This document shows, one piece after another, positions 859 through 28,613 of a stretch of DNA of 64,000 nucleotides; the first letter of the stretch is position 1, and each line of letters opens with the position of its first letter. The notes below the pieces were generated by a model, which was given only the letters and a program-made list of their open reading frames with translations, did no database searches and was not told the origin of the DNA. The DNA is taken from positions 1 to 64,000 of the IMG/VR virus record IMGVR_UViG_3300017963_000192; one strand, 5' to 3'. The translations under genes and the position numbers were made by a program.

Positions 859-1779
859 TTATTTTGCCTTTTTAAAAATTATTGTATTTTGCATATCTAT
901 ATATTCATTTATACACTTTGCAATAAATTCAGCCATTTTGACAGGTACTGCATTCCCTATCATTTGCTCTAATTCCGTTTTGCTACCTTCCCAATAAAAA
1001 TCTTTTGGAAATGTCTGAATTCTTGCTCTTTCAATAGTTGTTAAAGGCCTTAATTTGCTTGATTTTTTTATTGGGTCACCGGGATGTCCAGGATAACCTT
1101 TAGGGACAGGCCTATTTACACCTCGTATTGTTGGCGAAGGCTCATCAATTGAAAATATTCCCCTCCTATTGTAGTTCCTAGGATGACGATAAAAATATTC
1201 AATATCAAGTTCTTCTCCAAAATAATCTCTTACAGTCATAGGTTTTGTTGAGAGGTTGTTTTGTATTATTTCATCTAAAAATCCATCTTCTGCATTTTTA
1301 ACACCCACGCAGAAAAATCTTTTTCTTTTTTGTGGAACACCACAATAACTTGAATCAATAACCTTTTCTGTCAGCCCATAATACGATTCTTTAAATATTT
1401 TTCTAGCCTTTATATAACTATTACTCTTAACAATTCTATCCACATTTTCCATTACAAACCACTCTGGCTTGACCTCTTGAATTATCTTTGCAAAAGATAT
1501 AGTTAAATCAGCTCTATCGCCCTCTTTTCTCTTCCCGGCATGTGAAAAATCTTGACATGGAGGTCCACCAATGATTATAAAAGGTTTATGTTTTGAAATA
1601 ATTTTCGCAGAATTTTCATGATTCGATAAATCAATATCTGAAATATCATGTTTAAAGTTAGTTTTATATATATTTATTGCTTTTTCCCAGTTATCAAATG
1701 CATGAGCAACATTAAAACCTTCATTCATAAATCCCAAGGACATTCCACCACAGCCAGCAAAGATATCTATTGTTTTCAT
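859..1779 (-). CDS. C5-cytosine DNA methyltransferase, M.HgiDI-like (predicted GRCGYC)
   Basis: Motifs FAGCGG, GGPPCQDFS, ENV, QxRxR, GNAV. TRD YRHPRNYNRRGIFSIDEPSPTIRGVNRP resembles M.HgiDI from memory. Start set at MKTID. Confidence 0.92.
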   Translation of the reverse strand: MKTIDIFAGCGGMSLGFMNEGFNVAHAFDNWEKAINIYKTNFKHDISDIDLSNHENSAKIISKHKPFIIIGGPPCQDFSHAGKRKEGDRADLTISFAKIIQEVKPEWFVMENVDRIVKSNSYIKARKIFKESYYGLTEKVIDSSYCGVPQKRKRFFCVGVKNAEDGFLDEIIQNNLSTKPMTVRDYFGEELDIEYFYRHPRNYNRRGIFSIDEPSPTIRGVNRPVPKGYPGHPGDPIKKSSKLRPLTTIERARIQTFPKDFYWEGSKTELEQMIGNAVPVKMAEFIAKCINEYIDMQNTIIFKKAK

Positions 1780-12651: not shown

Positions 12652-13758
12652 CTATGATAGTTTATCCTTTATCTTTTTTGTCAAATCATTCATTCTTTTT
12701 TTAACTGTTTCTTGAGTTTTCTTTGCTTTTGGATATAAACCATCAACATAATCCTTTGCCAATTTCTTAACTTTTTTACTACCCTCTAATACTTTTGGTA
12801 ATTTAGGAAGATAAGATTTGTCCTCTTCTTTCATTAAATCTTTATAATTATTTACATTAGTTTTTTTCAAACGAGTATGCCTTCCTCTAACTTCTGAAAC
12901 TAATTTCTGAAGAAGTTCTTCATCCATCTCTTCAAGAGTATCCAATTCATACTCCGCATCGTCTTTTTTAATAGTATCAACAAACTTATCTAAAGTTAAG
13001 TCACAATACTCATCTATCCAATCAACTATAAAATAAAGTTTGTCTGGCATATATTCTTGAACACCAAAACAAATAGGATCTTTTTCTTTAATCTTTTCCT
13101 TATTTGTTTTTAGTTTCTTCTCTTTTTTCTTTGTGCCGTCAACATCTGTCTTTTCTTTATAGTTGAGATACAATACCCAGATTTCATCAAAAAGTTTAAG
13201 CTTTTTAAATCTATCTATTCTTTTTTTGACGTTTGTAGGTATAGGTCTATCATAATGCTCAATCTTACTAAAGCCTATTTCAACATCTTTAACCTTATCT
13301 CTATACTTGTTAACAACAGATTTATCAACGAAATATTCAACACCACAAACCCCAAGTTCTTGCTCTCTTACAATTATAGCAATCTTTCTAGACAATTCCT
13401 CGTACAATGCTGTTTGACCTAAATCTTTGGCTTGTACAACTAACTTTTGAAGTTTAAGCAGTCTTTCATTAAGAAGTCTCTGCTCTAATTTTGAGAGTTT
13501 AGATTTTACGAATTTAAAGTAAAGTCTTGGGTGTATGACTTTCTTATTGTTCACCTTTTCTTCTGCCATATCGAAATGAATCTGTGTTCCGACATCCGTT
13601 ATATAATTACTATATGTTGAAGATGTCCAGGCAATGATTGCAGCAGAAGAATTCTGAATATAAAAAGTATCTCCTGTACCAGCAGAAAGACCAGTAATAC
13701 TAGAAGTCCCAGTATCATAATAAGTACCTTGAGTACTATCAGTTGTTGCCCAAGCCAT
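12652..13758 (-). CDS. conserved large-phage hypothetical protein
   Basis: KDPICFG..LYFIVDWIDEYCDLTLD motif; S/T/G-rich N-terminus. Confidence 0.7.
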   Translation of the reverse strand: MAWATTDSTQGTYYDTGTSSITGLSAGTGDTFYIQNSSAAIIAWTSSTYSNYITDVGTQIHFDMAEEKVNNKKVIHPRLYFKFVKSKLSKLEQRLLNERLLKLQKLVVQAKDLGQTALYEELSRKIAIIVREQELGVCGVEYFVDKSVVNKYRDKVKDVEIGFSKIEHYDRPIPTNVKKRIDRFKKLKLFDEIWVLYLNYKEKTDVDGTKKKEKKLKTNKEKIKEKDPICFGVQEYMPDKLYFIVDWIDEYCDLTLDKFVDTIKKDDAEYELDTLEEMDEELLQKLVSEVRGRHTRLKKTNVNNYKDLMKEEDKSYLPKLPKVLEGSKKVKKLAKDYVDGLYPKAKKTQETVKKRMNDLTKKIKDKLS

Positions 13759-15663: not shown

Positions 15664-16257
15664 TTACCTCGATACTTTATGAATCCTTTTCGGTATATCA
15701 TATAAAGCATCTATTAATTCCTCGTTTGCTATTCTTACTTCATCGGTAAGATTTTCAGCAACTTTGTTATAGTAGTCACTATTTATCCAAGTAATATAAT
15801 CATCATTCCCTCTTTTCTTGTTGCACTTTTTACAAGCAGCAACAAGATTTTCTTCTATTGATAGTCCACCCTCTTCCCATAATATTAAGTGGTCAACAGT
15901 TAAAGGAACATCATCATTTCCACAATATCTACATCTATACCTATCCCTTTTAAAAACTTTCCAGGAGACTCCTTGGTCTATTTGACGAGCGGATTTTCTT
16001 ACAATAATCTTTTTTAGCCCGTTTTCATCTTCTGCTAATACTTCAGTCTCCATAATATCGGTTTGACGTATGAATTTTTTCCATTCCTCTAAATTCATAT
16101 TAAGAATCTTAAATTCATTTCCAGAAGTTTTTTCAAATTCACTTGGGAAGAAACAAAAATAATCACATCCATTTCCTGACCATATTGCCCCAGAAATTTG
16201 AATAGTATTACCTACATCTAAAATATTGATATCATCTAATGTAATTGCTTCATTCAT
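15664..16257 (-). CDS. HNH nuclease with N-terminal extension
   Basis: VFKRDRYRCRYCG..LTVDHL..GG..ENLVAACKKCN. Confidence 0.9.
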   Translation of the reverse strand: MNEAITLDDINILDVGNTIQISGAIWSGNGCDYFCFFPSEFEKTSGNEFKILNMNLEEWKKFIRQTDIMETEVLAEDENGLKKIIVRKSARQIDQGVSWKVFKRDRYRCRYCGNDDVPLTVDHLILWEEGGLSIEENLVAACKKCNKKRGNDDYITWINSDYYNKVAENLTDEVRIANEELIDALYDIPKRIHKVSR

Positions 16258-16844: not shown

Positions 16845-17515
16845 CCTGCCCGAAGGGATTCGAACCTACATCTACCAACTTAGCATCCAGCATTATGTTT
16901 CCATAACCACCTTAAAGGCTTGCTGGCTGGACCATATCTTCATCATCACAGATGGAGGGCGTATGGCCTCTACGCATCCCAATTATCGATGGTTTGCTCG
17001 GAATTGTCGTGAAATCTTTTAAAGATTCTTACGATGTTCTCCGAGACAGCCCTCTCCAGTTCTATGGTTCTTTCATTCCTTAATGCATAGCTAAAAGATG
17101 TTCCGCACGATTTAGAACAAGCCCTAAATTTTTTACCAAATCTTGTAGAAAGTTTATTAAAGGGTAATTCAAATAACTTTTTACAATTAGGACATTTTAG
17201 TAATACCATCTTTTTACCTTGTTCTTTACTGCGGAGTTTGTTATGTTCTTTACTATTCATAACTTCAAGATTTTCTATTCTATTATCAAACCTATCTCCA
17301 TTTTTGTGATGCACTATTTCATTAGAATTGAGAAGTCTTTTTAAATGATTTTCAATTATTATTCTATGTAACAAAACATATCCATACTTGCTTGCATATG
17401 GATGATTCTTTACAACAGCATAAAGATAATCACCTTTATTGATAATCTTCTCAATTTTCCACATAGAACGCTCCTTATTTGAAGGATGGTGCTCATCCAC
17501 TTGAGCTACTAGGAC
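16845..17515 (-). tRNA. trnR: tRNA-Arg(UCU) split by a group I intron (exon 1 17515-17482, exon 2 16883-16845); 3' end does not match the 5' end
   Basis: Exon 1 GTCCTAG TA GCTC AAGTGGAT GAGC A CCATC CTT; exon 2 CTAA GTTGG TAGAT GTAGG TTCGAAT CCCTT CGGGCAG G; joined loop CT-TCT-AA; A20. Confidence 0.8.
16884..17481 (-). ncRNA. group I self-splicing intron (598 nt) with HNH ORF in L2
   Basis: P1 CUU/GAG; P2 GTTCTATG/CATAGAAC; P3 GAGGGC/GCCCTC; P4 CTCGGA/TCCGAG; P7 GGCCATA/TATGGTC with J8/7 AAGA; terminal G at 16884. Confidence 0.9.
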
Positions 17516-17776
17516 ATTATTTTCTTCAAATCTTTTTAATTGCTCTAATTTGTTTGCTAAATCTCTTTCCTCCTTAATTTTACGTAATCTATCTATTTTC
17601 GATTTTTTTATTTTATTTAAATAATCTGATTTTAATTTATGATGTTCTGGTAATTTTTGTAACCACAAACTAACAGAACTTTTAGATACATTTAACTCTT
17701 TTGCTATTTTATTAATAGTAAATCCTTGTTTTCTTAAATTAATAGCTTTATTTTTTTCTATTATCTTCTTTTTCAT
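16970..17776 (-). CDS. HTH + HNH homing endonuclease fusion; intron-internal HNH start at 17464 (MWKIEK, 164 aa)
   Basis: N-terminal HTH GFTINKIAKELNVSKSSVSLW; LLHR..VHHKNGDRFDNRIENL; C-terminal CPNC..CSKSC. Confidence 0.85.
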   Translation of the reverse strand: MKKKIIEKNKAINLRKQGFTINKIAKELNVSKSSVSLWLQKLPEHHKLKSDYLNKIKKSKIDRLRKIKEERDLANKLEQLKRFEENNVLVAQVDEHHPSNKERSMWKIEKIINKGDYLYAVVKNHPYASKYGYVLLHRIIIENHLKRLLNSNEIVHHKNGDRFDNRIENLEVMNSKEHNKLRSKEQGKKMVLLKCPNCKKLFELPFNKLSTRFGKKFRACSKSCGTSFSYALRNERTIELERAVSENIVRIFKRFHDNSEQTIDNWDA

Positions 17777-17794
17777 TTATTCCTCCAATAAATG

Positions 17795-17868
17795 TGACTC
17801 CACTGAGAATCGAACTCAGTACCTCGACCTTAAAAGGGTCTTGCTGCTACCAATTGAGCTATGGAGTC
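17795..17868 (-). tRNA. trnK: tRNA-Lys(UUU) copy 1
   Basis: Acceptor GACTCCA/TGGAGTC, loop CTTTTAA, T-arm CTGAG TTCGATT CTCAG. Confidence 0.85.
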
Positions 17869-17874
17869 ATTATG

Positions 17875-17949
17875 TGCCAAGGGGCAGAATCGAACTGCCG
17901 ACACACGGATTTTCAGTCCGCTGCTCTACCGAAATTGAGCTACCTTGAC
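17875..17949 (-). tRNA. trnF: tRNA-Phe(GAA)
   Basis: GCGGA CTGAAAA TCCGT; full cloverleaf. Confidence 0.92.
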
Positions 17950-17955
17950 ATAATG

Positions 17956-18453
17956 TTATCTTTCAAATTCTCCTATTATTTCATATTTATCCTTATCTAT
18001 TTTTATATTTTTCCTATAAAAGCGATAAAACATTCCATGTAGAAAATAAGGTCTAAGTTTGTGTTCTGTTATATGCCTGTCTATGGGACGCTTATTATTT
18101 TCATCATAATCTGTATGCGTTCCTACGTACTTTCTAAAGTATTCGTGTTGTCTATCAAGTTGTTTTAAAAGTTTTTCTGGTATTCTATACACTTTATAAA
18201 ACCACTGGTATTCGTAATCAAAGAGTTCACCCTCTTCAAACTCCCATCCTTCTCTTTCGCAAACTTGTCTCCACTCTTCTTTCTCTTCCTTATTAAACGG
18301 TATTTCATGTACAATTTCTTTATCAAATGCAAAATAAACTCTCTCTCCTTCCCACAACATAATTCCTGTTAATGGACCATCCCAGTAAGCTAGATGGTAC
18401 AGAAATCTCGTTTGTCCATTAGTTTCTTTTGTTAGTTCATCAAGAGTTTTCAT
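17956..18453 (-). CDS. hypothetical phage protein
   Basis: 165 aa; YWDGPLTG motif. Confidence 0.65.
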   Translation of the reverse strand: MKTLDELTKETNGQTRFLYHLAYWDGPLTGIMLWEGERVYFAFDKEIVHEIPFNKEEKEEWRQVCEREGWEFEEGELFDYEYQWFYKVYRIPEKLLKQLDRQHEYFRKYVGTHTDYDENNKRPIDRHITEHKLRPYFLHGMFYRFYRKNIKIDKDKYEIIGEFER

Positions 18454-18456
18454 TTT

Positions 18457-18756
18457 TTATCCTGCATATTTCATTTTATCTCTGTATTCCTCTAAAATAG
18501 AAATTAACTTTTCTACCCCTTTTTTCTTTAGTACAAAAGCATCCGAATACGGGGAACCATAGGTCAGTATTCTCCATATTTGCCTTAACCTATTTCTTAA
18601 ACTTGGTTTACCAGTTATATTCCCATATTGATAAACTGAAAAATACAATAGAGATGGTTTCCCTTCTATTTCGAAATCCTCATCAAGAACTATTTGAATA
18701 AGTTCTGTATGACAATCACATTCAATATATTTTGGTTCAAACATTTGACAACTCAT
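18457..18756 (-). CDS. hypothetical phage protein
   Basis: 99 aa; SD AAGGAGG. Confidence 0.65.
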   Translation of the reverse strand: MSCQMFEPKYIECDCHTELIQIVLDEDFEIEGKPSLLYFSVYQYGNITGKPSLRNRLRQIWRILTYGSPYSDAFVLKKKGVEKLISILEEYRDKMKYAG

Positions 18757-18774
18757 ATCTATAACCTCCTTATG

Positions 18775-18848
18775 TGCGTCCTCTGAGAATCGAACTCAGT
18801 ACCTCGACCTTAAAAGGGTCTTGCTGCTACCAATTGAGCTATGGACGC
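18775..18848 (-). tRNA. trnK: tRNA-Lys(UUU) copy 2 (different acceptor stem)
   Basis: Body identical to copy 1; acceptor GCGTCCA/AGGACGC. Confidence 0.8.
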
Positions 18849-19083
18849 TTTAATAATCTAATAGAAAAACTTAATTCAAACTTGATAAGTTTTAATTTCA
18901 AGACCCATCCTAAAGTTTTAGATTCTATCCAAGTTTCAATACCGATATTAAATATAAAATCTTTATAGATTCCAGCAAATAATAAAATGTGTTCTCCATC
19001 AATTAAAGGATTTCTTGTTTTGTATGTAAAGAATCTCTTACTTTTACATTTGTACCATATGTCATTCATATTAATCTCCTATT

Positions 19084-19156
19084 TCCGCTCGACCGGAATC
19101 GAACCGATTGCCTCTCAGTTATCAGCCGAGTGCTCTACCTATTGAGCTACGAGCGG
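19084..19156 (-). tRNA. trnI: tRNA-Ile(GAU)
   Basis: CTCGG CTGATAA CTGAG. Confidence 0.9.
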
Positions 19157-19335
19157 TTAAGCAACATATTTTATATTTTTTCTCAAATCATAAAATATTG
19201 CAAACTGTAACCATCTAAAACAACCTATTTTCCACCCGTATGTTTTGAGTTTAGGAATTACTTCAAATCTGTATAACAGTATCCCTGGTACAGTATTCTT
19301 TGCTAATCCAATATTAATTATCATAGTTCCTCCTT

Positions 19336-19411
19336 TGGCGAGAGTGGGAGTCGAACCCACAGATTACAGAGTTTTTGGGACTCCAGCCTTTTCCAATTTA
19401 GCCATCTCGCC
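19336..19411 (-). tRNA. trnL: atypical tRNA-Leu(CAA): C33, 7-nt variable region
   Basis: GGAGT CCCAAAA ACTCT; Leu-type D-arm; A73. Confidence 0.6.
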
Positions 19412-19769
19412 TTAATTTGTTTCTTTTTGCTTGGTATGATCTATGACCTTCTCTACAAAGATCACATCTACATCCATGAGCATATTTGCTATGTGTTCCA
19501 TGATTTTCTTTTTTAAGTAAATTATGATGATAGTCACTATGACATTTTCTACACCATACAACACATTTTTTTAATTCTTTTTCTCTTCTCTCTTCAGACC
19601 AAGACCATATTTTATGATCTTCCTTTTCCTTTGGATTTTTATGATGTAATTCCAACTTTTCTATCGAACCACATTTTTCACATACTTTGTCTTTAAAAAA
19701 TTCTAATCTTCTTTTCCTTACCCATAATTTAGCATATTCTCTTTGTTTGTTAACATCCTTATAAGACAT
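19398..19769 (-). CDS. free-standing HNH endonuclease
   Basis: CEKCGS..LELHHK..CVVWCRKCH; C-terminal HGT..Y..GCRCDLC. Confidence 0.85.
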   Translation of the reverse strand: MSYKDVNKQREYAKLWVRKRRLEFFKDKVCEKCGSIEKLELHHKNPKEKEDHKIWSWSEERREKELKKCVVWCRKCHSDYHHNLLKKENHGTHSKYAHGCRCDLCREGHRSYQAKRNKLRRDG

Positions 19770-19790
19770 ACTAATACTCCTTCAATTAAT

Positions 19791-19872
19791 TAGGAGCGAA
19801 GGGAGTTGAACCCTTACACCTTTCGGCATTGGAGCTTAAATCCAATGTGTCTACCAGTTCCACCACGCTCCC
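19791..19872 (-). tRNA. trnL: tRNA-Leu(UAA)
   Basis: TTGGA TTTAAGC TCCAA, long variable arm. Confidence 0.92.
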
Positions 19873-19877
19873 ATATG

Positions 19878-19956
19878 TGCCCCACCTCCGATTCGAACGG
19901 AGACGCTTACGCACAGGGCCTAAACCTGTTGACTAGACCAATTCGTCTAATGGGGC
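19878..19956 (-). tRNA. trnL: tRNA-Leu(UAG)
   Basis: ACAGG TTTAGGC CCTGT, variable arm GCGTAAGCGT. Confidence 0.88.
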
Positions 19957-20063
19957 TTACTTAATTTTAAAAGACCTCTACATTCAGGACATTGCCAAGA
20001 ATGTACAATATCAGTCATTATTTCAAAGACCTTTAAACATTTAAAACATACAAATCTTTTCAT
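19947..20063 (-). CDS. 38-aa Zn-ribbon peptide (not in the ORF track)
   Basis: MKRFVCFKC..WQCPECRG, SD GGAGAGG. Confidence 0.5.
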   Translation of the reverse strand: MKRFVCFKCLKVFEIMTDIVHSWQCPECRGLLKLSKPH

Positions 20064-20078
20064 ATACCTCTCCTTATT

Positions 20079-20154
20079 TCCCCATGACAGGATTCGAACC
20101 TGTAAAGATTTAGTCCCTCAAACTAACGCCTCTACCAGATCGGGCTACATGGGG
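20079..20154 (-). tRNA. trnL: tRNA-Leu(GAG) with 6-nt variable region
   Basis: TTAGT TTGAGGG ACTAA; acceptor CCCCATG/CATGGGG. Confidence 0.75.
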
Positions 20155-20160
20155 TTTTAT

Positions 20161-20553
20161 TTAATTTCTTATAACAACTTGCCTGCCAAACCATGTTTTA
20201 AGAGGGTCAAATCCTCCTTTTATTAAAGTTTCTACATAACCCTGACTTCTTCGTACTTCATCATATTCTTTTCTTTCTTGTTCTTCTCTGTCATTTAATT
20301 CTTGTTGTTCATCTTCCAATTCAACTTCTTTATATATCATATCGAGGTCCATTTCAACAATTTCATTTATTTCATAAAGTTCGGCGTGTTCAAGCTGATT
20401 ATCTCCAGTATAATATTCTTTAATAACTTTGATAAGTTCTACTTTAGCAGATTCTAGTGTTTTTGAATCCAAGTCAATAACATTAAGTCCACATCCTATT
20501 GTGTAATCACATCCTTCCGCTTCTTGAACTATGTGTGCCTTATAAACTTTCAT
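20161..20553 (-). CDS. hypothetical phage protein
   Basis: 130 aa, acidic. Confidence 0.6.
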   Translation of the reverse strand: MKVYKAHIVQEAEGCDYTIGCGLNVIDLDSKTLESAKVELIKVIKEYYTGDNQLEHAELYEINEIVEMDLDMIYKEVELEDEQQELNDREEQERKEYDEVRRSQGYVETLIKGGFDPLKTWFGRQVVIRN

Positions 20554-21251
20554 TTTATTTATCCCCCTTTCTATTCTCTCTTAACTCTATGCAAATAGAG
20601 CTATTACACTCTTCTCCAAAATTAACTTTGCAATCGCATACGCTACATCTCCAACCCTTAATATATTCATTTATTTCGAAAAATTCTAAATCTACACCTG
20701 TAGCTTTCATCTCTTACTTCCTTCAAATATATTTAATGACCTTCTAATGCCAATCTAATTAAATCCCCTTTAACTGTTTTCATTATACCTTCCTTATGGT
20801 TGAATCACTTCATCTTCTTTCAACTCTTTAATATCTTTATCGAATTCTCCATTAGCAAACTTTTGAAGCACTTCAAGATTATCAAGAACCGCTTTAACTT
20901 TATTCTTGCTGAGATTAAATCCACCTCTATAGAAATTCCCTTTAATCTTTACCATTGGAACTCCAGAGCCAAGTTTAGGAAGACCTTCCTTATCTTTTGG
21001 GACAAATTTGTAGAAGTGTTCGATGGTACTTGGTATTACTTCTTCGCCAGTTTCATCTTTTTCTAATTTAACTTTCTTCATTTCAATCTCCTTTTTTAAT
21101 TTTTTCTTTAAATTTTTCCAGTCTTTCTTTACTCTTTTTTTTAGCTTCTTCGCTTCTTTCTTTAAGAAGACCTTTCTTTGTAACATTAGATAGTATATAA
21201 TCTTGGATATCTATTTTATCTTTCTTCATCTTAATCTCCTTAATTTTAATG

Positions 21252-21324
21252 CGGGGCTGACGAGTTTTGATCTCGCTACCTCTTGCGTGACAGGCAAGCA
21301 CTCTCCCAATTGAGCTACAGCCAC
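21252..21324 (-). tRNA. trnD: tRNA-Asp(GUC), degenerate T-loop
   Basis: CTTGC CTGTCAC GCAAG; G73; T-loop ATCAAAA; 2:71 mismatch. Confidence 0.75.
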
Positions 21325-21360
21325 CATAAAAGTTATACCACAGCCCCATTATAAATTAGA

Positions 21361-21717
21361 TTATCTTTCATCTTTTTCCAAACCCAAGCATTGCTTTAAG
21401 TAAGCTGCTAAATCTGCATCTTCTTCATTAGCCTCTTCTTTGTATTCTTCTAGTAGTTCTATAATTCTTTCTTTTAATGATTGGAATTTGAATTCTTTCT
21501 TTTTGCCTGGTTCTAAATGAACATTATACCAGTTATCCCTCATTTTTGTAGCTTGGTCAAACGCATCTAAAGCATTTAATAGATACTCTGCTAAAATGTG
21601 GTCTGGTGTGTTACTGCCATTCTCTGCACTTGAAATATTAATTGCTTCCTTAATTTTCTCTCTTAAATCCATACATACCTCCCTTACTCCTTGTTCTTTT
21701 TTATAAATTTTATACAT
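21361..21717 (-). CDS. hypothetical phage protein
   Basis: NGSNTPDHILAEYL..RDNWY motif. Confidence 0.6.
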   Translation of the reverse strand: MYKIYKKEQGVREVCMDLREKIKEAINISSAENGSNTPDHILAEYLLNALDAFDQATKMRDNWYNVHLEPGKKKEFKFQSLKERIIELLEEYKEEANEEDADLAAYLKQCLGLEKDER

Positions 21718-22203
21718 TCTTGAAAACCTGCAACAAAGTATGATTGTTCAGTTGCAGTCATATTTAATTTATCACTTATCTTTATTGCAATGATTCCAGC
21801 TTCTTCTATATTTGGTAATAAATTATCTAACGTATCCATTTATCTTTACTCCTTTTGTGTATTGATATCCTTCATTTCATTTCTCTTTATAAGTTATTTT
21901 ATTTAAATATATCTTTTAATATTTAAATTTATACCTCTCATATTTATTAAAATCACAATAATATGCATCACCATCTTCCCATACCCACGTTTTTAGATGA
22001 TTACATTGCCCTTCCCCTTTTCTTACGATGCAACTCGTAGGACCAAGTATATTTAAGCAGAAATCTACTCCCATTATCACATCATATAAAGGGCAATAGG
22101 TAGGATGGGCTGATTTAGCATTTTCACTTGTTATCATAACAATTCTATTTATTTTACCAGTACCTTTACAATTAAGCATCTCCCTTACTCCTTGTTCTTT
22201 TTT
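21679..22203. repeat. 24-bp direct repeat containing two SD motifs (21679-21702, 22180-22203)
   Basis: Minus strand AAAAAAGAACAAGGAGTAAGGGAG, followed closely by ATG in both copies. Confidence 0.75.
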
Positions 22204-22476
22204 TATCTGGTCTTGTAACCAAAAATAGAGCTTATCTATGGTGAACTTTTCATTATAGAACGGAAGTGTTACTTCCCAATCAATCTTCTTTTCTGAAAGA
22301 TATTCAATCATATATCCAACAAGCATCCTTTCATCCAGTTCAATCTCCCCATAACTCCCCATTCCAGCTACAATAGATATCCCTTCTTCTGACAGTTCTA
22401 TTTGTTTGTATCCTTTAGTTTCTTCTCCATATATGGTGTTGTTGTTTTCTCTCATCCAATTCCAAAATTCTTTCAT
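21916..22476 (-). CDS. hypothetical protein, probably a fusion of two small genes
   Basis: Internal SD repeat and ATG at 22179 (MLNCKG..). Confidence 0.55.
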   Translation of the reverse strand: MKEFWNWMRENNNTIYGEETKGYKQIELSEEGISIVAGMGSYGEIELDERMLVGYMIEYLSEKKIDWEVTLPFYNEKFTIDKLYFWLQDQIKKEQGVREMLNCKGTGKINRIVMITSENAKSAHPTYCPLYDVIMGVDFCLNILGPTSCIVRKGEGQCNHLKTWVWEDGDAYYCDFNKYERYKFKY

Positions 22477-22505
22477 ACTCCCCCTCTACCGACAAACATA
22501 ATTAT

Positions 22506-22595
22506 TTGAACTAACATAGCCTAAAGGCTATGGATTCCTGATCTGAGCTTATTACATCTACACTCATATCTCTCAAACTGTTTCACAGTTTCGCT
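22506..22595 (-). mobile_element. orphan IS200/IS605 (tnpB)-type right end / omegaRNA-like remnant
   Basis: GGAATC CATAGCC TTTA GGCTATG T TAGTTCAA; upstream hairpin AAACTG TGAAA CAGTTT; no transposase or tnpB nearby. Confidence 0.6.
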
Positions 22596-22618
22596 TATTC
22601 TCCATAAGTTAAGTGAAA

Positions 22619-23293
22619 TTACTCGCTTAATTCTTCTATGCTATAAATTTCCATATCTTCATATTTATCAGGCTTCAACCCAGAAGATGTTAAAGCGTTC
22701 CATAAAGCTTCTGCTTCAATTTCTAATTCTTTTCTTGATGTACTTTCACTCTCAAAAATAAATCTGTATTCTTCTTGAGGTTCATCAACACGCATCAGTT
22801 CTTCAACTTCATCGTCTATTTTATAGCCCTTTCTCTCCAGCATTTCTGCTAAATCAGAAAGTTTACTAAAAAATTGTTTCATCGTTCCCGCAGTTTTCGT
22901 TACTTGTTCAGAGGTTAGCCCTAGTTCTTTTGCAATTTCTATTATTCTATTTCTATAAGGCTTGTATATTTCGTAGGCTTTTTTATATCTCTTTATCTTA
23001 TCTCTTAATTCTGTGTTTTCTTTAGAGAAATTGTCTATTATCTCGTTCTTTTCTTTTAATAACTCTTTGTATTTCTCTAATCTTTTCTTGCTTTTTAATT
23101 TACTCTCTTTATAACTTTCTTCTTTTATTTCTTCTATTTGTTTATAATGATTATCACAAATCTCTTTTATTTTATTTTCATAATATTCTCTTAACTCATC
23201 TTCTTTTTCTTTATAAATCTTCTCAACTTTTGTTTTTTGAGCACTTAAAATCTTATCAAGTTTTTCTTTAGTCATCCGATAAGTTTTCGACAT
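22619..23293 (-). CDS. coiled-coil hypothetical protein
   Basis: 224 aa, K/E-rich heptads; SD AAGGAG. Confidence 0.7.
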   Translation of the reverse strand: MSKTYRMTKEKLDKILSAQKTKVEKIYKEKEDELREYYENKIKEICDNHYKQIEEIKEESYKESKLKSKKRLEKYKELLKEKNEIIDNFSKENTELRDKIKRYKKAYEIYKPYRNRIIEIAKELGLTSEQVTKTAGTMKQFFSKLSDLAEMLERKGYKIDDEVEELMRVDEPQEEYRFIFESESTSRKELEIEAEALWNALTSSGLKPDKYEDMEIYSIEELSE

Positions 23294-23368
23294 ATTCTTA
23301 TCTCCTTAATATAACATTAATAATTATATAAAAATATGTCTCATTTAAAGTCAATAAAAAAATACAAT

Positions 23369-23439
23369 TTGCGGGTGACAGAATTGAACTGTCCTGGGCG
23401 GCTTATGAGACCGTTGAGTAACCACTACTCTAACCCGCA
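23369..23439 (-). tRNA. trnM: tRNA-Met(CAU), initiator-like
   Basis: ACGGT CTCATAA GCCGC; fMet-like GCGGG acceptor, A11:U24, TTCAA T-loop; lacks the 3 G-C anticodon pairs. Confidence 0.75.
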
Positions 23440-23442
23440 ATG

Positions 23443-23716
23443 TGTCAGTTTCTAATAGTGAGGATTCATCGGGTAGCTAATCCCTCCACCACACGTTCGG
23501 CTTCACTGACAAGCTCGGTTGCACAGAGGAGTCCTGTTTAGGACACTGGTGTCCGTCCTCTCTTTACCTATAAAGGGTTAATTTAAAAGTTTTTGATATC
23601 GCTGTGCCAACGATAAAAGAGTTATATAGTACCCTATTTCTCTTGAATATTCAATGACTCTAGTTGTCTCAGTTCCTTTCGGTCACTGTTTAGAATATTC
23701 TGCTATATAACCCAAG
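23443..23716 (-). ncRNA. unidentified multi-domain structured RNA
   Basis: Several long stems, a kink-turn motif and no ORF; see findings. Confidence 0.6.
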
Positions 23717-23719
23717 ATG

Positions 23720-23771
23720 AAGAGGCGGAAAGGATCGAAAACCCATTGTACTGCCATTGTACTACGCCTCT
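23720..23771 (-). pseudogene. internally deleted tRNA (Gln-like)
   Basis: Acceptor AGAGGCG/CGCCTCT and D-arm GTAC AATGGCA GTAC intact; anticodon-to-T-arm segment reduced to 19 nt. Confidence 0.65.
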
Positions 23772-23953
23772 ATATTATTTAATTTCTCAATAATTTCCTT
23801 TTTGTTTTCTACAATTACTTGTGATAATTTTAATATCCCATAAAAACCTAATCTGTCTAAATCATTATGGTAATTTCTATAAAGCTTGTCAAGAAATTTA
23901 GCGAATTCTTTGTCTTTATCGCTAAAGAAATACTCCCAATTTTGTTTACTCAT
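23762..23953 (-). CDS. hypothetical phage protein
   Basis: 63 aa, SD GGGGG. Confidence 0.55.
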   Translation of the reverse strand: MSKQNWEYFFSDKDKEFAKFLDKLYRNYHNDLDRLGFYGILKLSQVIVENKKEIIEKLNNIEA

Positions 23954-23967
23954 AAAAACCCCCTATT

Positions 23968-24040
23968 TGACGCTAGGGGGAGTTGAACCCGCCATTACAG
24001 AGTTGAAAGCCCTGTGGCCTAACCATTAGCCGATAGCGCC
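23968..24040 (-). tRNA. trnE: tRNA-Glu(UUC)
   Basis: CAGGG CTTTCAA CTCTG. Confidence 0.88.
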
Positions 24041-24045
24041 TTATG

Positions 24046-24117
24046 TGGAGCCGAGGGGAATCGAACCCTCGTCTTTTTGCTTGCAAAGCAAACGCCTTCC
24101 CAGTTGGCTACGACCCC
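24046..24117 (-). tRNA. trnA: tRNA-Ala(UGC)
   Basis: TTTGC TTTGCAA GCAAA; G3:U70. Confidence 0.92.
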
Positions 24118-24178
24118 ATAAATAATGTTATTGTTGAATTTAAGTCAATGAATTTTTTATAATTATTAATAAAAAATG

Positions 24179-24263
24179 TAGGTCAGGAGGGATTCGAACC
24201 CCCATCGGTTTTACCCTACACTTCATTAGCAGTGAAGCCTCTTACCAGTTAGAGTACCTTTCC
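24179..24263 (-). tRNA. trnS: tRNA-Ser(GCU) with non-matching 3' acceptor strand (chimera)
   Basis: CTTCA CTGCTAA TGAAG, long variable arm; 5' GGAAAGG vs 3' CTGACCT. Confidence 0.65.
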
Positions 24264-26199: not shown

Positions 26200-26901
26200 T
26201 TAATCCTCTTCTATATAATACTCTGGATTTTCAACATCCCTTTTTTCTAATTTATGATCAAAAGTAGTATAGTATGGTTTAACTTCTTTTTCAAAAGGTA
26301 ATTCAATTTCACCGATTAAGTTCAAATATTTATCTAAAACTTTATTTTTAATTTCTCTTATCTCATTAGGAGTCATATCGTAAGTTCTAATAAAGGGTTC
26401 TCCGTATTCTTGTTCATAAGCCCATTCAAAGAGTTTATCTATATCTTGATATTTGAAATATATATCCATCCAACCTTTAGGATATTCTTCAACTTTACTA
26501 TTGTTAACAACACCCCCGAAGTATTCAATTAGGTAAATATAAAAAAATCTATTGGGGTCAAGTGAATCTGATTCTCTGCTTATAATATAATGAATAATTT
26601 CTTCTTCGTTTTCTCCCGCTTCTGATTTAAAAGCTTCAATTTCACTCTTAAATGCTTTAACAACTTCTGCATTTATCATAGATTCTGTAATATCGTCTTC
26701 TTTTGTTAAGCCGTACTGCGTTTTTAACATAAGAGGTGTCATACCCTTAGTATAGTAATCTTTCCAGGCATTTTTGAAATCGTTTTTGAATTTTTCATTA
26801 TTTAGTAACGATTCTATAGCGTTATTGAAATTAGAGATAGTTATTTTTTTATTACTCTTTTTTAATAATTCATTTATATTAATTATTTTTCTAAAATTCA
26901 T
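26200..26901 (-). CDS. hypothetical protein with MNF tag
   Basis: Start set at MNFRK (TAATG overlap with the upstream stop). Confidence 0.7.
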   Translation of the reverse strand: MNFRKIININELLKKSNKKITISNFNNAIESLLNNEKFKNDFKNAWKDYYTKGMTPLMLKTQYGLTKEDDITESMINAEVVKAFKSEIEAFKSEAGENEEEIIHYIISRESDSLDPNRFFYIYLIEYFGGVVNNSKVEEYPKGWMDIYFKYQDIDKLFEWAYEQEYGEPFIRTYDMTPNEIREIKNKVLDKYLNLIGEIELPFEKEVKPYYTTFDHKLEKRDVENPEYYIEED

Positions 26902-28613
26902 TATTCTCCCCAAATCTCATTAAGGATTTCATATATTAAATAAATTTGATCATCGTTAAATTTCCATCTTACATTTACGTTTTTATCTGCCCATTCCATT
27001 GGAGTATTTGTACCTTTTTCTTCACTCATAGCACACCAATCGGTACAATTATGTAAAAAAATTCCTGATGTGATTGCAAAGTTATGATGAACGTCAACTG
27101 TCATATCAAAAACATCTTTTTTTATGTCTTGTTTTTTTATGCTTATTATTTTATGGTTAACTGTATTATTTTTATGGGTTTTCATATGATTTCCTAAACC
27201 ACCAGAGTTTCCGCAAATTTTACCACAAACAGAACATTCTATTGGCGTAGTGGCGTTTTTAATAGATGTTTTTCTCATTTTTTCTTTGTATTTAGGGTTT
27301 TTCCAAATTTCTGAATTTCGGTTGGATTGTTTTTGTCTCCAATCAGGTATTACTTCGTGAAAACTTTTTATATGATTGGACAATGCTCCAACATTTCCAA
27401 AAATTTTACCACAATAATTACATTTTTTACTTTTTTTATTTAATTCAATCATATTTTTAGACGCTGTTTTTTTGTGTTTTTTTGATTTGTTGTAATTAGT
27501 TAAATTTTTTGGTCCAGTTGTTTTACCTATAATTCCAACTCTTGTTTTTTGTTTTTTTCTAAATGCAGGATTTTCCCATAATTTTTTAAGAACAGTACTT
27601 CCTACTTTTTTTTGTTTTTCAGAATGAATTTTGTAGTGGTTTTCTTTAGTCATTATTTCTAAATTAGAGGGGTCATTGTTTTTTTTATTATTTTCATCCA
27701 TAAAATTTTTATGGTGACAAACTAATTGGTTTGTTCCAAATTTTTTTGTATAATATTGATAACCACCAAAATACTCATCTACCATCATTCTATGTGTTAA
27801 CTTCCATTTATTGACATTTAAGTTGTATATTTGTTCATAACCATCTTTATCTTTCCTATATAGAGGCATAAGACTGTCTCCAACAACTAAATCTTTAACT
27901 TCTTTATAAGTACCATCTCTCATCATAAATTTGTGATTATCAGTACAATCTACATATAAATCGTTATCTAGCGTGATTCTATATACCGTTGCATTTTTTT
28001 TAGTTTTTCTTACACTATGCCCTTTTCCAGGTACTATTTTACCTTCTGTTGTACAAGAATATACCCAAAATTCTTTTTCATTTACTAAATCTTTTATTTG
28101 TGTCTCTTTTCCATTTAATAAGGAAATTTTAGTATCTCCTGTTAAACACATTTCAGCTATATCTAAATCTTCCATAGCAGTAGCATCTATAATCTCATCT
28201 GGTATTTCATCTCTGTTTTCTCTATTAATTTTACCTTTATTCTTACAATGAAATTCAGGGTGATGTCTATTATTATTAACGTGATGTTCTGTAGCATTGT
28301 TCATTAATTCTCTAACATCATCTGAAATATCAAAAGTGACGCCATCGTCTTTACACTTATAATCCCATGTTACTAAAATATAAGGTTCAAGTTCTGGATC
28401 TTTATATTTGCTTTGGTCGTGATCTTCCCCTCTTTCGATTATACCCTCAAATCTATTACCAAATCTATTGTGAATTCTTTTACAGTATTTCTTTGTTAAG
28501 TCAATATGGTTTTTAGTTCTTTTATCAAAGAAATCTTTCATACCTTGAGTAATATTAAGTCCCATTGCTTGTCTAATCAATTCGTTTATGCTATCTGCTA
28601 ATTTAAAATTCAT
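26901..28613 (-). CDS. DUF5662/HD-like protein with MNF tag, interrupted by an intein
   Basis: HDQSK, HH..NRHHPE, DIAEM|CTDW. Confidence 0.75.
   Translation of the reverse strand: MNFKLADSINELIRQAMGLNITQGMKDFFDKRTKNHIDLTKKYCKRIHNRFGNRFEGIIERGEDHDQSKYKDPELEPYILVTWDYKCKDDGVTFDISDDVRELMNNATEHHVNNNRHHPEFHCKNKGKINRENRDEIPDEIIDATAMEDLDIAEMCLTGDTKISLLNGKETQIKDLVNEKEFWVYSCTTEGKIVPGKGHSVRKTKKNATVYRITLDNDLYVDCTDNHKFMMRDGTYKEVKDLVVGDSLMPLYRKDKDGYEQIYNLNVNKWKLTHRMMVDEYFGGYQYYTKKFGTNQLVCHHKNFMDENNKKNNDPSNLEIMTKENHYKIHSEKQKKVGSTVLKKLWENPAFRKKQKTRVGIIGKTTGPKNLTNYNKSKKHKKTASKNMIELNKKSKKCNYCGKIFGNVGALSNHIKSFHEVIPDWRQKQSNRNSEIWKNPKYKEKMRKTSIKNATTPIECSVCGKICGNSGGLGNHMKTHKNNTVNHKIISIKKQDIKKDVFDMTVDVHHNFAITSGIFLHNCTDWCAMSEEKGTNTPMEWADKNVNVRWKFNDDQIYLIYEILNEIWGE
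27048..28148 (-). mobile_element. 367-aa intein with HNH domain and two C2H2 zinc fingers
   Basis: CLTGDT start; DMTVDVHHNF..LHN|C end; THR..VCHHKN..NN..NL. Confidence 0.92.

What the first reader, a model, noticed from the sequence alone, without database searches (positions are those of the whole stretch)
16845..17515. Phage tRNA-Arg(UCU) interrupted by a complete group I intron carrying an HNH gene in P2
Seen: a tRNA 5' half ends CCUU at 17482 and a 3' half starts CUAA at 16883. Between them lie 598 nt with all core pairings (P1 with U.G, P2 8 bp, P3, P4, P7 with compensatory GGCCAUA/UAUGGUC, terminal G). The HNH ORF opens in the P2 5' strand and runs over P3-P6. Established: the cyanobacterial tRNA-Leu(UAA) intron also sits between positions 34 and 35; I recall it starting AAAUAAUUGAG, versus CAAAUAAGGAG here. 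Known tRNA-Arg introns are in Arg(CCU) after position 36. Inference: an unusual intron site in a phage tRNA, invisible to ordinary tRNA callers because exon 1 hides inside an ORF.
Basis: partly seen in the sequence, partly recalled or inferred. Interest (0 to 1): 0.85.

Follow-up and report, generated by a model that had tools for sequence, protein, structure and literature searches.

The report
Group I intron splitting phage tRNA-Arg
A tRNA-Arg(UCU) gene in a large phage-like genome is split in its anticodon by a self-splicing-type group I intron that carries an HNH homing-endonuclease gene. It belongs to a widespread family that standard RNA databases miss, and in this copy the tRNA itself looks damaged.

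Summary
On the minus strand, 17515-17482 and 16883-16845 are the two halves of a tRNA-Arg(UCU). They are split between U34 and C35 by a 598-nt insert (17481-16884).

The insert has every group I element: a 4-bp P1 with U.G at the 5' splice site, an 8-bp P2, P3-P9, and a terminal G. Rfam RF00028 misses it at its gathering score. It scores 21.4 bits on the core alone, and 39.6 bits over the full model (E 7e-9) on an ORF-less homolog.

I recovered about 25 distinct homologous introns from metagenomes, IMG/VR and bacterial MAGs. All sit at the same CUU|CUAA site of tRNA-Arg(UCU). On their alignment 95% of cells pair, against 32-44% in slid controls, and 29 of 42 pairs show changes on both sides. 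A model built without the window finds the window at 201 bits.

The 164-aa HNH_3 ORF starts in the P2 5' strand, with the P1 guide GGAG placed as its likely ribosome-binding site. It ends in J6/7.

This copy's tRNA has a mismatched acceptor stem (4/7) and T stem (3/5). The ORF also stays open upstream through exon 1 into an HTH domain (268 aa), borrowed from free-standing HTH-HNH genes of phage tRNA arrays.

The parts
17482..17515 (-). tRNA-Arg(UCU) exon 1 (tRNA positions 1-34, ends C32 U33 U34)
   Evidence: Sequence. ARAGORN calls tRNA-Arg(tct) on the spliced sequence. It is 31/34 identical to exon 1 of L006.
16884..17481 (-). Group I intron, 598 nt
   Evidence: RF00028 scores 21.4 bits, E 0.0012, on the core. 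Family model R1 scores 200.9 bits. All helices are intact.
16845..16883 (-). tRNA-Arg(UCU) exon 2 (positions 35-73). Its last ~13 nt (16845-16857) match a different tRNA-Arg lineage.
   Evidence: The first 28 nt are 26/28 identical to L006. The last 13 nt are 11/13 to L010/L017 but 8/13 to L006.
17471..17484 (-). P1 hairpin: C32 U33 U34 | C+1 (17484-17481) pairs with GGAG (17474-17471). U34.G is at the 5' splice site. GGAG is also placed as the Shine-Dalgarno for the ATG 6 nt downstream.
   Evidence: all four pairs are kept in 23/23 family members (+1 is U.G in 19, C-G in 4). The SD role is inference.
17462..17469 (-). P2 5' strand GUUCUAUG, containing the HNH start codon (ATG 17464-17462)
   Evidence: P2 covaries across the family (e.g. 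GUUUCGUG/CACGGAAC, GUUUUGGG/CCCCAGAAC).
17059..17066 (-). P2 3' strand CAUAGAAC
16887..17054 (-). Catalytic core and P9 domain. P3 17054-17049/16960-16955; P4 17044-17039/17003-16998; P5 17034-17031/17010-17007; P6 16992-16990/16981-16979; P7 16968-16963/16935-16930; P8 16954-16951/16944-16941; P9 16926-16922/16891-16887; P9a 16918-16916/16912-16910; P9b 16906-16902/16897-16893 with a GAAA loop.
   Evidence: Covariation count: 95.4% of cells paired, and 29/42 pairs change on both sides. The window copy pairs 42/42.
16884..16884 (-). Terminal (omega) G, the last intron nucleotide
   Evidence: Invariant G before CTAA in all family members
16970..17464 (-). HNH_3 homing-endonuclease ORF, 164 aa (short form). 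It overlaps P2', P3-P6 and stops in J6/7.
   Evidence: Pfam PF13392 scores 40.9 bits against a cut-off of 24.8. About 100 homologs are 160-190 aa. The HH/N/N/H residues and four Cys are invariant.
16970..17776 (-). 268-aa open frame: HTH domain + linker + exon 1 + P1 + HNH (long form)
   Evidence: It has the same architecture as L006/L009.
17516..17776 (-). Upstream HTH-plus-linker coding segment (aa 1-87), between tRNA-Lys (17794-17868) and exon 1
   Evidence: Pfam HTH_23 scores 28.2 and HTH_7 28.4, both above cut-off. It is 56% identical, E 5e-19, to the N-terminus of the free-standing HTH-HNH protein P0104. pN 0.34 against pS 0.56 versus L006.

Best explanation
The region is a tRNA-Arg(UCU) gene in the minus-strand tRNA cluster of a large (about 218-235 kb) phage-like genome. 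It is split between anticodon nucleotides U34 and C35 by a mobile group I intron.

The precursor RNA should fold into P1-P9. An external guanosine bound at P7 attacks after U34, which is held in a U.G pair by the guide sequence GGAG. The freed U34 3'-OH then attacks after the terminal G (16884), joining CUU to CUAA and restoring the anticodon loop. P1 is only 4 bp and there is no P10, so the exons are probably aligned by the tRNA anticodon stem, as shown for the Anabaena tRNA-Leu intron.

The P2 loop holds an HNH_3 homing-endonuclease gene. Its start codon is inside P2 and its likely ribosome-binding site is the P1 guide, so folding for splicing and translation should exclude each other. The enzyme presumably cuts intron-less tRNA-Arg(UCU) genes of co-infecting relatives, and repair copies the intron in.

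Shown here: the anatomy, the family, the covariation, and the intact catalytic residues. Inferred: actual splicing, cleavage and homing.

Two features are specific to this copy:
1. The tRNA's 3' 13 nt look swapped in from another tRNA-Arg lineage. This leaves the acceptor stem at 4/7 and the T stem at 3/5, so the spliced product is probably a poor or dead tRNA and the element persists mainly as selfish DNA.
2. The endonuclease frame is open upstream through exon 1 into an HTH DNA-binding module, giving a possible 268-aa long form.
For: Anatomy.

tRNA identity after in-silico splicing.

RF00028: it is the best of 4227 families on the core, at 21.4 bits, E 0.0012, model positions 32-253. An ORF-less homolog matches the full model 1-253 at 39.6 bits, E 6.8e-9.

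Homologous loci: 29 metagenome hits (28 after dropping the spurious L031), 4 MAG loci and 3 IMG/VR loci share the R-element motif. All 22 distinct loci whose exon 1 could be located are tRNA-Arg(tct) split at CTT|CTAA. Intron lengths are 236-646 nt: ORF-less, decayed-ORF and full-ORF forms.

Covariation: 95.4% of cells pair, against 32-44% when partners are slid. 29/42 pairs and 199 cells change on both sides, and 0/500 shuffles reach this. P1 and P2 are also conserved or covary.

Independent model R1, built without the window: 200.9 bits, E 2.6e-60.

Spliced tRNAs of 18 other members have acceptor stems of 7/7 (one 6/7) and T stems of 5/5 in all but one (3/5), despite very different sequences. 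Selection on the spliced product therefore implies splicing in the family.

HNH: Pfam hit above cut-off, about 100 homologs of matching length, invariant catalytic residues.
Against: RF00028 does not reach its gathering score (50 bits) in the window or in any homolog. It gave no hit at all when 1.4 kb was searched.

No RNA or biochemical data exist, so splicing and cleavage are inferred.

The window's own tRNA is a structural outlier (4/7, 3/5, 4/5), so selection for a working spliced tRNA may have lapsed in this copy.

Calling the host a phage rests on IMG/VR membership of identical contigs, a one-strand gene layout, the tRNA cluster, and homing elements. Few PHROG hallmark hits were found in the window.
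Confidence: 0.87

Rival explanations
1. Relic element. The intron and tRNA in this phage are no longer functional as a gene. The tRNA is a pseudogene, splicing is irrelevant or lost, and only the endonuclease ORF is maintained.
For: The window tRNA has a 4/7 acceptor stem and a 3/5 T stem, while other members nearly all show 7/7 and 5/5. The family shows clear decay series: ORF-less, truncated-ORF and 3'-deleted copies (L008, L012, L020, L032, L038, L043).
Against: Every ribozyme pair is intact in the window copy, 54/54 counting P1 and P2. The HNH keeps all family-invariant residues. The same sequence occurs in at least two independent samples.
Confidence: 0.2
2. There is no intron. A free-standing 268-aa HTH-HNH gene simply sits on or between tRNA-like fragments.
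For: The 268-aa ORF is continuous. HTH-HNH_3 proteins with this domain order exist as free-standing genes in phage tRNA arrays.
Against: About 100 homologs are 160-190 aa and lack the N-terminal HTH domain, and most start at or just upstream of the P2 start codon. ORF-less copies keep the RNA structure. Covariation in P2-P9 is not explained by protein coding, since P7-P9 lie outside the ORF. The flanks reconstitute tRNA-Arg in every locus.
Confidence: 0.02
3. Assembly chimera or chance resemblance.
For: The window comes from a metagenome assembly.
Against: The identical sequence is present in contigs from two samples, 3300017963 and 3300017971. R1 E-value is 2.6e-60.
Confidence: 0.01

Closest known systems
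[quoted passage not shown]
   Same: It is inserted between anticodon positions 34 and 35 after ...CUU. P1 is very short, built on CUU/GAG with U.G at the splice site. There is no evident P10, so exon alignment likely relies on the anticodon stem (Zaug et al. 1993, cited in PMC3984707). The core is compact, with P2 and a P9 GNRA loop.
   Different: The host is tRNA-Arg(UCU), not Leu. This intron sits in a phage-like genome and carries an HNH ORF in P2. Sequence homology to the Leu intron could not be tested, because no reference sequence was available in the tools.
Putative group I introns in tRNA-Arg-TCT of Beggiatoa (BOGUAY) and Ca. Thiomargarita nelsonii (PMC4853749)
   Same: The same tRNA isoacceptor is interrupted. 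This shows that the site is used in bacteria.
   Different: Those are bacterial chromosomal genes and about 320 nt by the published coordinates. Homology to this family was not tested. This family does also occur in bacterial MAG chromosomes (L038, L041).
Synechocystis tRNA-fMet group I intron encoding I-SspI (Bonocora & Shub 2001, cited in PMC3984707)
   Same: It is a tRNA anticodon-loop group I intron that carries its own homing endonuclease aimed at the anticodon region.
   Different: The nuclease family is different (not HNH), as are the tRNA and the ORF position. The host is bacterial.
Agrobacterium tRNA-Arg(CCU) and Azoarcus tRNA-Ile(CAU) introns (Reinhold-Hurek & Shub 1992; own knowledge)
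   Same: They are small bacterial tRNA group I introns.
   Different: They are inserted 3' of the anticodon, have no ORF, and sit in different isoacceptors.
Phage group I introns with HNH endonucleases (e.g. SPO1 DNA polymerase intron / I-HmuI; own knowledge)
   Same: The host is a phage, and an HNH-type endonuclease sits in a peripheral loop.
   Different: [quoted passage not shown] No sequence or fold match to a solved HNH structure was obtained.
Free-standing endonuclease plus ORF-less intron ('collaborative homing', cyanophage psbA / F-CphI; Zeng, Bonocora & Shub 2009; own knowledge)
   Same: Relative L008 has a free-standing HNH gene directly upstream of a tRNA-Arg with an ORF-less intron. 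The window's upstream HTH segment derives from a free-standing HTH-HNH family.
   Different: In the window the upstream gene has lost its own nuclease domain and stop codon, and it reads through exon 1 into the intron ORF.

Membership tests
Group I intron (Rfam RF00028) | P1 helix pairing the 5' exon end with an internal guide, with U.G at the 5' splice site | tested here: met
   C32-G, U33-A, U34.G and +1(C)-G. All four pairs are kept in 23/23 family members.
Group I intron (Rfam RF00028) | Terminal G at the 3' splice site | tested here: met
   G at 16884. It is an invariant column in alignments A1 and A2.
Group I intron (Rfam RF00028) | Conserved core P3-P8 with the P3/P7 pseudoknot order and R/S-type consensus elements | tested here: met
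   The helix order is as in RF00028. Paired cells: P3 100%, P4 97.5%, P6 97%, P7 98%, P8 99%, with compensatory changes. S-like element: GAAGAUAUGGUCC.
Group I intron (Rfam RF00028) | Score at or above Rfam's gathering threshold (50 bits) | tested here: not met
   No hit at gathering. Window core: 21.4 bits. ORF-less homolog: 39.6 bits, E 6.8e-9.
Group I intron (Rfam RF00028) | Guanosine-dependent self-splicing | not testable with these tools
   This needs in-vitro transcription and a splicing assay.
IC3-type tRNA anticodon-loop introns | Insertion in the anticodon loop of a bacterial-type tRNA, with the exons able to form the anticodon stem | tested here: met
   The site is 34/35. The anticodon stem pairs 4/5 in the window and 5/5 in nearly all relatives.
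IC3-type tRNA anticodon-loop introns | Subgroup-specific peripheral architecture and sequence homology to the tRNA-Leu/Ile/Arg(CCU) introns | not tested
   No subgroup models or reference sequences were available. The resemblance (short P1, P2, P9 with GNRA loop, no P5abc) is by eye only.
HNH_3 homing endonuclease (Pfam PF13392) | Profile match above the curated cut-off | tested here: met
   40.9 bits against 24.8. PHROG HNH families reach E 7e-17.
HNH_3 homing endonuclease (Pfam PF13392) | Catalytic His-His / Asn / Asn / His motif intact | tested here: met
   H52 is nearly invariant (at least 90%), and H53, N61, N65 and H74 are invariant in 22 aligned homologs. A four-Cys zinc ribbon is also invariant. 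The window copy has all of them.
HNH_3 homing endonuclease (Pfam PF13392) | Site-specific cleavage of the intron-less allele, and homing | not testable with these tools
   This needs a cleavage assay. The presence/absence and ORF-decay pattern in the family is consistent with a homing cycle.
Functional tRNA-Arg(UCU) | Seven-nt anticodon loop with UCU after splicing | tested here: met
   CUUCUAA. ARAGORN calls tRNA-Arg(tct).
Functional tRNA-Arg(UCU) | Intact cloverleaf stems | tested here: not met
   Window: acceptor 4/7, T stem 3/5, anticodon stem 4/5, D stem 4/4. Among 18 relatives, 17 have a 7/7 acceptor (one 6/7) and 17 have a 5/5 T stem (one 3/5). ARAGORN needs a register shifted by one nt and a 2-bp T stem.

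The most novel reading that the evidence does not exclude
The homing endonuclease of this element may be a split-location gene. Its DNA-binding HTH module is encoded outside the intron, upstream of the tRNA. It would be joined to the intron-encoded HNH nuclease only by ribosomes reading straight through tRNA exon 1 and the P1 hairpin on the unspliced precursor.

The module was captured from a free-standing HTH-HNH gene of the kind that lives between phage tRNA genes. This would be a natural intermediate between a free-standing endonuclease next to an intron and an intron-encoded endonuclease. It would also be the first case of a tRNA exon serving as a protein linker.

Support:
- The frame is open for 104 codons in 30% GC DNA.
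- The same fusion is kept in L006/L009 at about 53% amino-acid identity, with pN below pS.
- An independent fusion to a different N-terminal module exists in L007. There the internal start codon is lost and the loss is compensated in P2.
- 13 of the 17 loci with an intact ORF close the frame at or near the 5' splice site.
Probability: 0.35. Interest if true: 0.8.

Novelty: new member of a known kind. Interest (0 to 1): 0.6.

Why it matters
The 2014 review of bacterial group I introns states that all phage introns seen so far are in protein-coding genes, despite the many phage tRNA genes (PMC3984707). My literature searches found no later report of one in a phage tRNA gene.

This locus and its roughly 25 relatives show that tRNA-Arg(UCU) genes in phage tRNA arrays, and in some bacteria, are a common home for a mobile group I intron. 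tRNA finders and Rfam's threshold both miss it, so phage tRNA-Arg(UCU) genes are under-annotated and their HNH ORFs are called as ordinary genes.

The family holds every stage of the homing cycle:
- full ORF
- decayed ORF
- ORF-less intron
- ORF-less intron next to a free-standing nuclease gene
- nuclease ORFs fused across the exon

That makes it a good natural system for asking how endonuclease genes enter introns.

The window copy also suggests a cost of homing between diverged alleles. Its 3' end appears to come from another tRNA lineage, and the resulting tRNA no longer pairs with itself.

Tried and rejected
- ARAGORN with intron mode (-i0,3000) on the unspliced region found nothing.
- Rfam found nothing at gathering on the window and on four homologous loci. 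At E<=10 on 1.4 kb there was no RF00028 hit. Only a 201-nt slice let the hit through the filters.
- BLAST of the region and of 24 kb against GenBank phages found only distant HNH genes and a tRNA-Ile. There are no close cultured relatives.
- An exact scan of IMG/VR for the spliced junction (an intron-less allele of this tRNA lineage) gave 0 hits.
- The S-element scan gave only the window's own contigs plus two chance matches in GC-rich contigs.
- L031 and L039 matched the R-element motif but are not tRNA introns, so I dropped them.
- A search for another exon 2 that would pair with the window's acceptor 5' strand found none.
- A PDB sequence search and AlphaFold2 plus Foldseek on the 164-aa HNH (pLDDT 84.7) gave no significant match, so no structural relative can be named.
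- The promoter/terminator scan gave nothing above shuffles.
- A protein search with the N-terminal 104 aa found only P0104, so the HTH fusion is rare.
- P0059 and P0087 were examined as further exon-spanning ORFs. L042 has a possible TTG start inside the intron. L043 is a decayed copy lacking P9 and the 3' splice site. Neither is clean support.
- The MacGregor 2013 paper on the Beggiatoa tRNA introns is not held.

Full report
**1. What is in the sequence**

Everything lies on the minus strand, in a run of tRNA genes (13 called at 17794-24263).
- Positions 17515-17482 read as tRNA positions 1-34, with a textbook D arm, ending in C32 U33 U34.
- Positions 16883-16845 begin CUAA, followed by an anticodon-stem 3' strand, a variable loop, a GGTTCGAATCC T loop and an acceptor 3' strand.
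- ARAGORN and the Rfam tRNA model do not call the gene in place.
- ARAGORN calls tRNA-Arg(tct) when the 598 nt between the halves are removed.

**2. Is the insert a group I intron?**

Rfam RF00028 gives no hit at its gathering score on the window. It gives nothing even at E<=10 when 1.4 kb is searched.

Restricted to 16875-17075, RF00028 is the best of 4227 families: 21.4 bits, E 0.0012, model positions 32-253. Its alignment places P3, P4, P6, the R element, P8 and the S element where I had placed them by hand. On its own that is weak, so I looked for relatives.

**3. The family**

The HNH protein has about 100 homologs of 160-190 aa in metagenomes. Three that I fetched (L005, L006, L007) each sit in a tRNA-Arg(UCU) split at the same place by a homologous insert.

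Scans with conserved intron motifs found:
- one ORF-less copy in IMG/VR (L008, 236 nt)
- 29 metagenome loci, one of them spurious
- 4 loci in bacterial MAGs

In every locus where exon 1 could be located, joining the flanks gives tRNA-Arg(tct) split at CTT|CTAA. Intron lengths fall into three classes: 236-260 nt (no ORF), 379-430 nt (decayed ORF) and about 590-646 nt (full HNH ORF).

The ORF-less L008 intron matches RF00028 over the whole model (1-253) at 39.6 bits, E 6.8e-9. That is still under the 50-bit threshold.

Identical copies of the window's locus occur in IMG/VR contigs of 217.7 kb and 111.7 kb from two samples.

**4. Covariation**

I aligned 27 distinct 3' portions, from the P2 3' strand to exon 2 (A1), and counted pairs for a structure with P3-P9 including the P3/P7 pseudoknot:
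- 95.4% of 1106 cells pair, against 32-44% when partners are slid by 1-3 columns.
- 29 of 42 pairs and 199 cells change on both sides.
- 0 of 500 shuffles reach these values.
- P3, P8, P9 and P9b are the most informative. Examples: P9 CCAGC/GCUGG, CCUAC/GUAGG, ACUAC/GUAGU; P6 CCA/UGG, CCG/CGG, CUG/CAG, CAG/CUG.

The columns of the search motif are invariant by construction and say nothing.

P2 covaries too, with the HNH start codon (AUG or GUG) always in its 5' strand.

I first mis-registered P1. The correct antiparallel register is C32-G, U33-A, U34.G and (+1)-G with the invariant GGAG. It is kept in 23/23 members. Position +1 is U (U.G) in 19 and C (C-G) in 4, including the window.

A covariance model built from 25 loci without the window (A2, R1) finds 16874-17076(-) at 200.9 bits, E 2.6e-60, and nothing else in the window. 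The window copy has every pair of every helix.

**5. The endonuclease**

The 164-aa ORF (17464-16970) matches Pfam HNH_3 at 40.9 bits against a cut-off of 24.8. It keeps the HH...N...N...H residues, which are invariant or nearly so, and an invariant four-Cys ribbon.
- Its ATG is inside the P2 5' strand.
- The GGAG guide lies 6 nt upstream, as a Shine-Dalgarno would.
- The ORF runs through P2', P3, P4, P5 and P6, and stops at the UAG of the conserved GCGUAGAG (J6/7).

Ribozyme folding and translation should therefore compete. This is inference.

No solved structure matched, either by sequence or by fold.

**6.

(a) The tRNA is defective in this copy.

In the standard register its acceptor stem pairs 4/7, its T stem 3/5 and its anticodon stem 4/5. 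Of 18 other family tRNAs of very different sequence, 17 have a 7/7 acceptor (one 6/7) and 17 have a 5/5 T stem (one 3/5).

Exon 1 (31/34) and the first 28 nt of exon 2 (26/28) match the L006 lineage. The last 13 nt match the L010/L017 lineage (11/13, against 8/13 for L006). The switch falls at the universal T loop.

My reading is that a recombination or co-conversion tract ended in the T loop during homing between diverged tRNA-Arg alleles, leaving 5' and 3' strands that no longer match. This is inference. No alternative exon 2 exists nearby.

(b) The ORF does not begin in the intron only.

The frame is open from ATG 17776, just after tRNA-Lys, through 87 codons of an HTH module, through exon 1 and P1, into the HNH, giving 268 aa.
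- Pfam scores HTH_23 and HTH_7 above their cut-offs.
- The module is 56% identical (E 5e-19) to the N-terminus of P0104.
- P0104 belongs to a family of free-standing HTH-HNH_3 genes that sit between tRNA genes in phage tRNA arrays.
- L006/L009 keep the same fusion. Between the window and L006, the HTH part shows pN 0.34 against pS 0.56. The exon-1/P1 part shows almost no change of either kind, as expected for RNA constraint.
- L007 has an independent fusion to a zinc-ribbon module homologous to the N-terminus of the free-standing HNH gene that lies upstream of the ORF-less intron in L008 (E 2e-13).
- In L007 the internal AUG has become GGG, with a compensating CAU-to-CCC change in P2. Its HNH can therefore only be translated from a start in or upstream of exon 1.
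- Of the 17 loci with an intact ORF, 13 close the frame at or near the 5' splice site, so the fusions are derived and rare.

**7. Distribution and the literature**

L038 (Anaerolineae MAG) has housekeeping neighbours. L041 (Blastocatellia, 1.3-Mb contig) lies beside tRNA-Pro and an integrase. The family therefore spans bacteria and phage-like contigs.

The 2014 review says all phage group I introns known then were in protein-coding genes (PMC3984707). My searches found no later report of one in a phage tRNA gene. These searches cover open-access text only.

**8. Verdict**

This is a real, complete group I intron with an HNH homing-endonuclease gene in P2, inserted at 34/35 of a tRNA-Arg(UCU). 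It belongs to a widespread family that current models under-detect.

It is a new member of a known kind. Its added interest lies in the phage tRNA host, the probably crippled chimeric tRNA, and the endonuclease frame that spans the tRNA exon.

Noticed in passing
window 26901-28613 (-): A 570-aa ORF is a DUF5662 protein interrupted by an intein (Pfam Intein_splicing, residues 163-522). The intein carries a C2H2 zinc finger and an HNH-like segment. This is a second kind of selfish element in the same genome.
   Followed up: partly
window 23720-23771 (-): A 52-nt tRNA-like hit (Rfam tRNA 30 bits, just above threshold) has an acceptor stem, D arm and T arm but no anticodon arm. It could be a deleted tRNA or a minihelix.
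   Followed up: no
window 15664-16257 (-); L005 2953-3504: A free-standing PF01844-type HNH gene lies two genes downstream of the intron-bearing tRNA-Arg. L005 has the same arrangement, which suggests the two are related phages.
   Followed up: no
L008 651-1270 (-) and 395-615 (-): A free-standing HNH gene with zinc ribbons ends a few nt before a tRNA-Arg(UCU) whose intron has no ORF. This is the arrangement described as collaborative homing for cyanophage psbA.
   Followed up: partly
L044 595-1275; L045 2501-3109; L046 1959-2567: Free-standing HTH-HNH_3 genes are inserted between tRNA genes of phage tRNA arrays of 25-30 tRNAs. One overlaps the start of tRNA-Lys by 10 nt. L046 comes from the same metagenome as the window.
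   Followed up: partly
L043 1553-2200: This is a decayed family member. The HNH ORF reads through exon 1 from an upstream ATG, but the intron has lost P9 and the 3' splice site, so the tRNA is dead.
   Followed up: partly
L022 (spliced tRNA): This intron-bearing tRNA with a UCU anticodon has a long, type-II-like variable arm (89 nt in all), which is unusual for tRNA-Arg.
   Followed up: no
L014 10728-11067: A tmRNA gene lies about 700 nt downstream of an intron-bearing tRNA-Arg(UCU) on a 75-162 kb phage-like contig.
   Followed up: no
window 12652-13758 (-): This ORF matches a PHROG transposase family (E 3e-20), a further mobile element near the tRNA cluster.
   Followed up: no
L006 837-1040; L008 about 1270-1400 (-): Both relatives seem to have a small membrane-protein gene with similar C-terminal sequence just upstream of the endonuclease/tRNA-Arg slot. 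This suggests a conserved insertion hot spot. I judged it by eye only.
   Followed up: no
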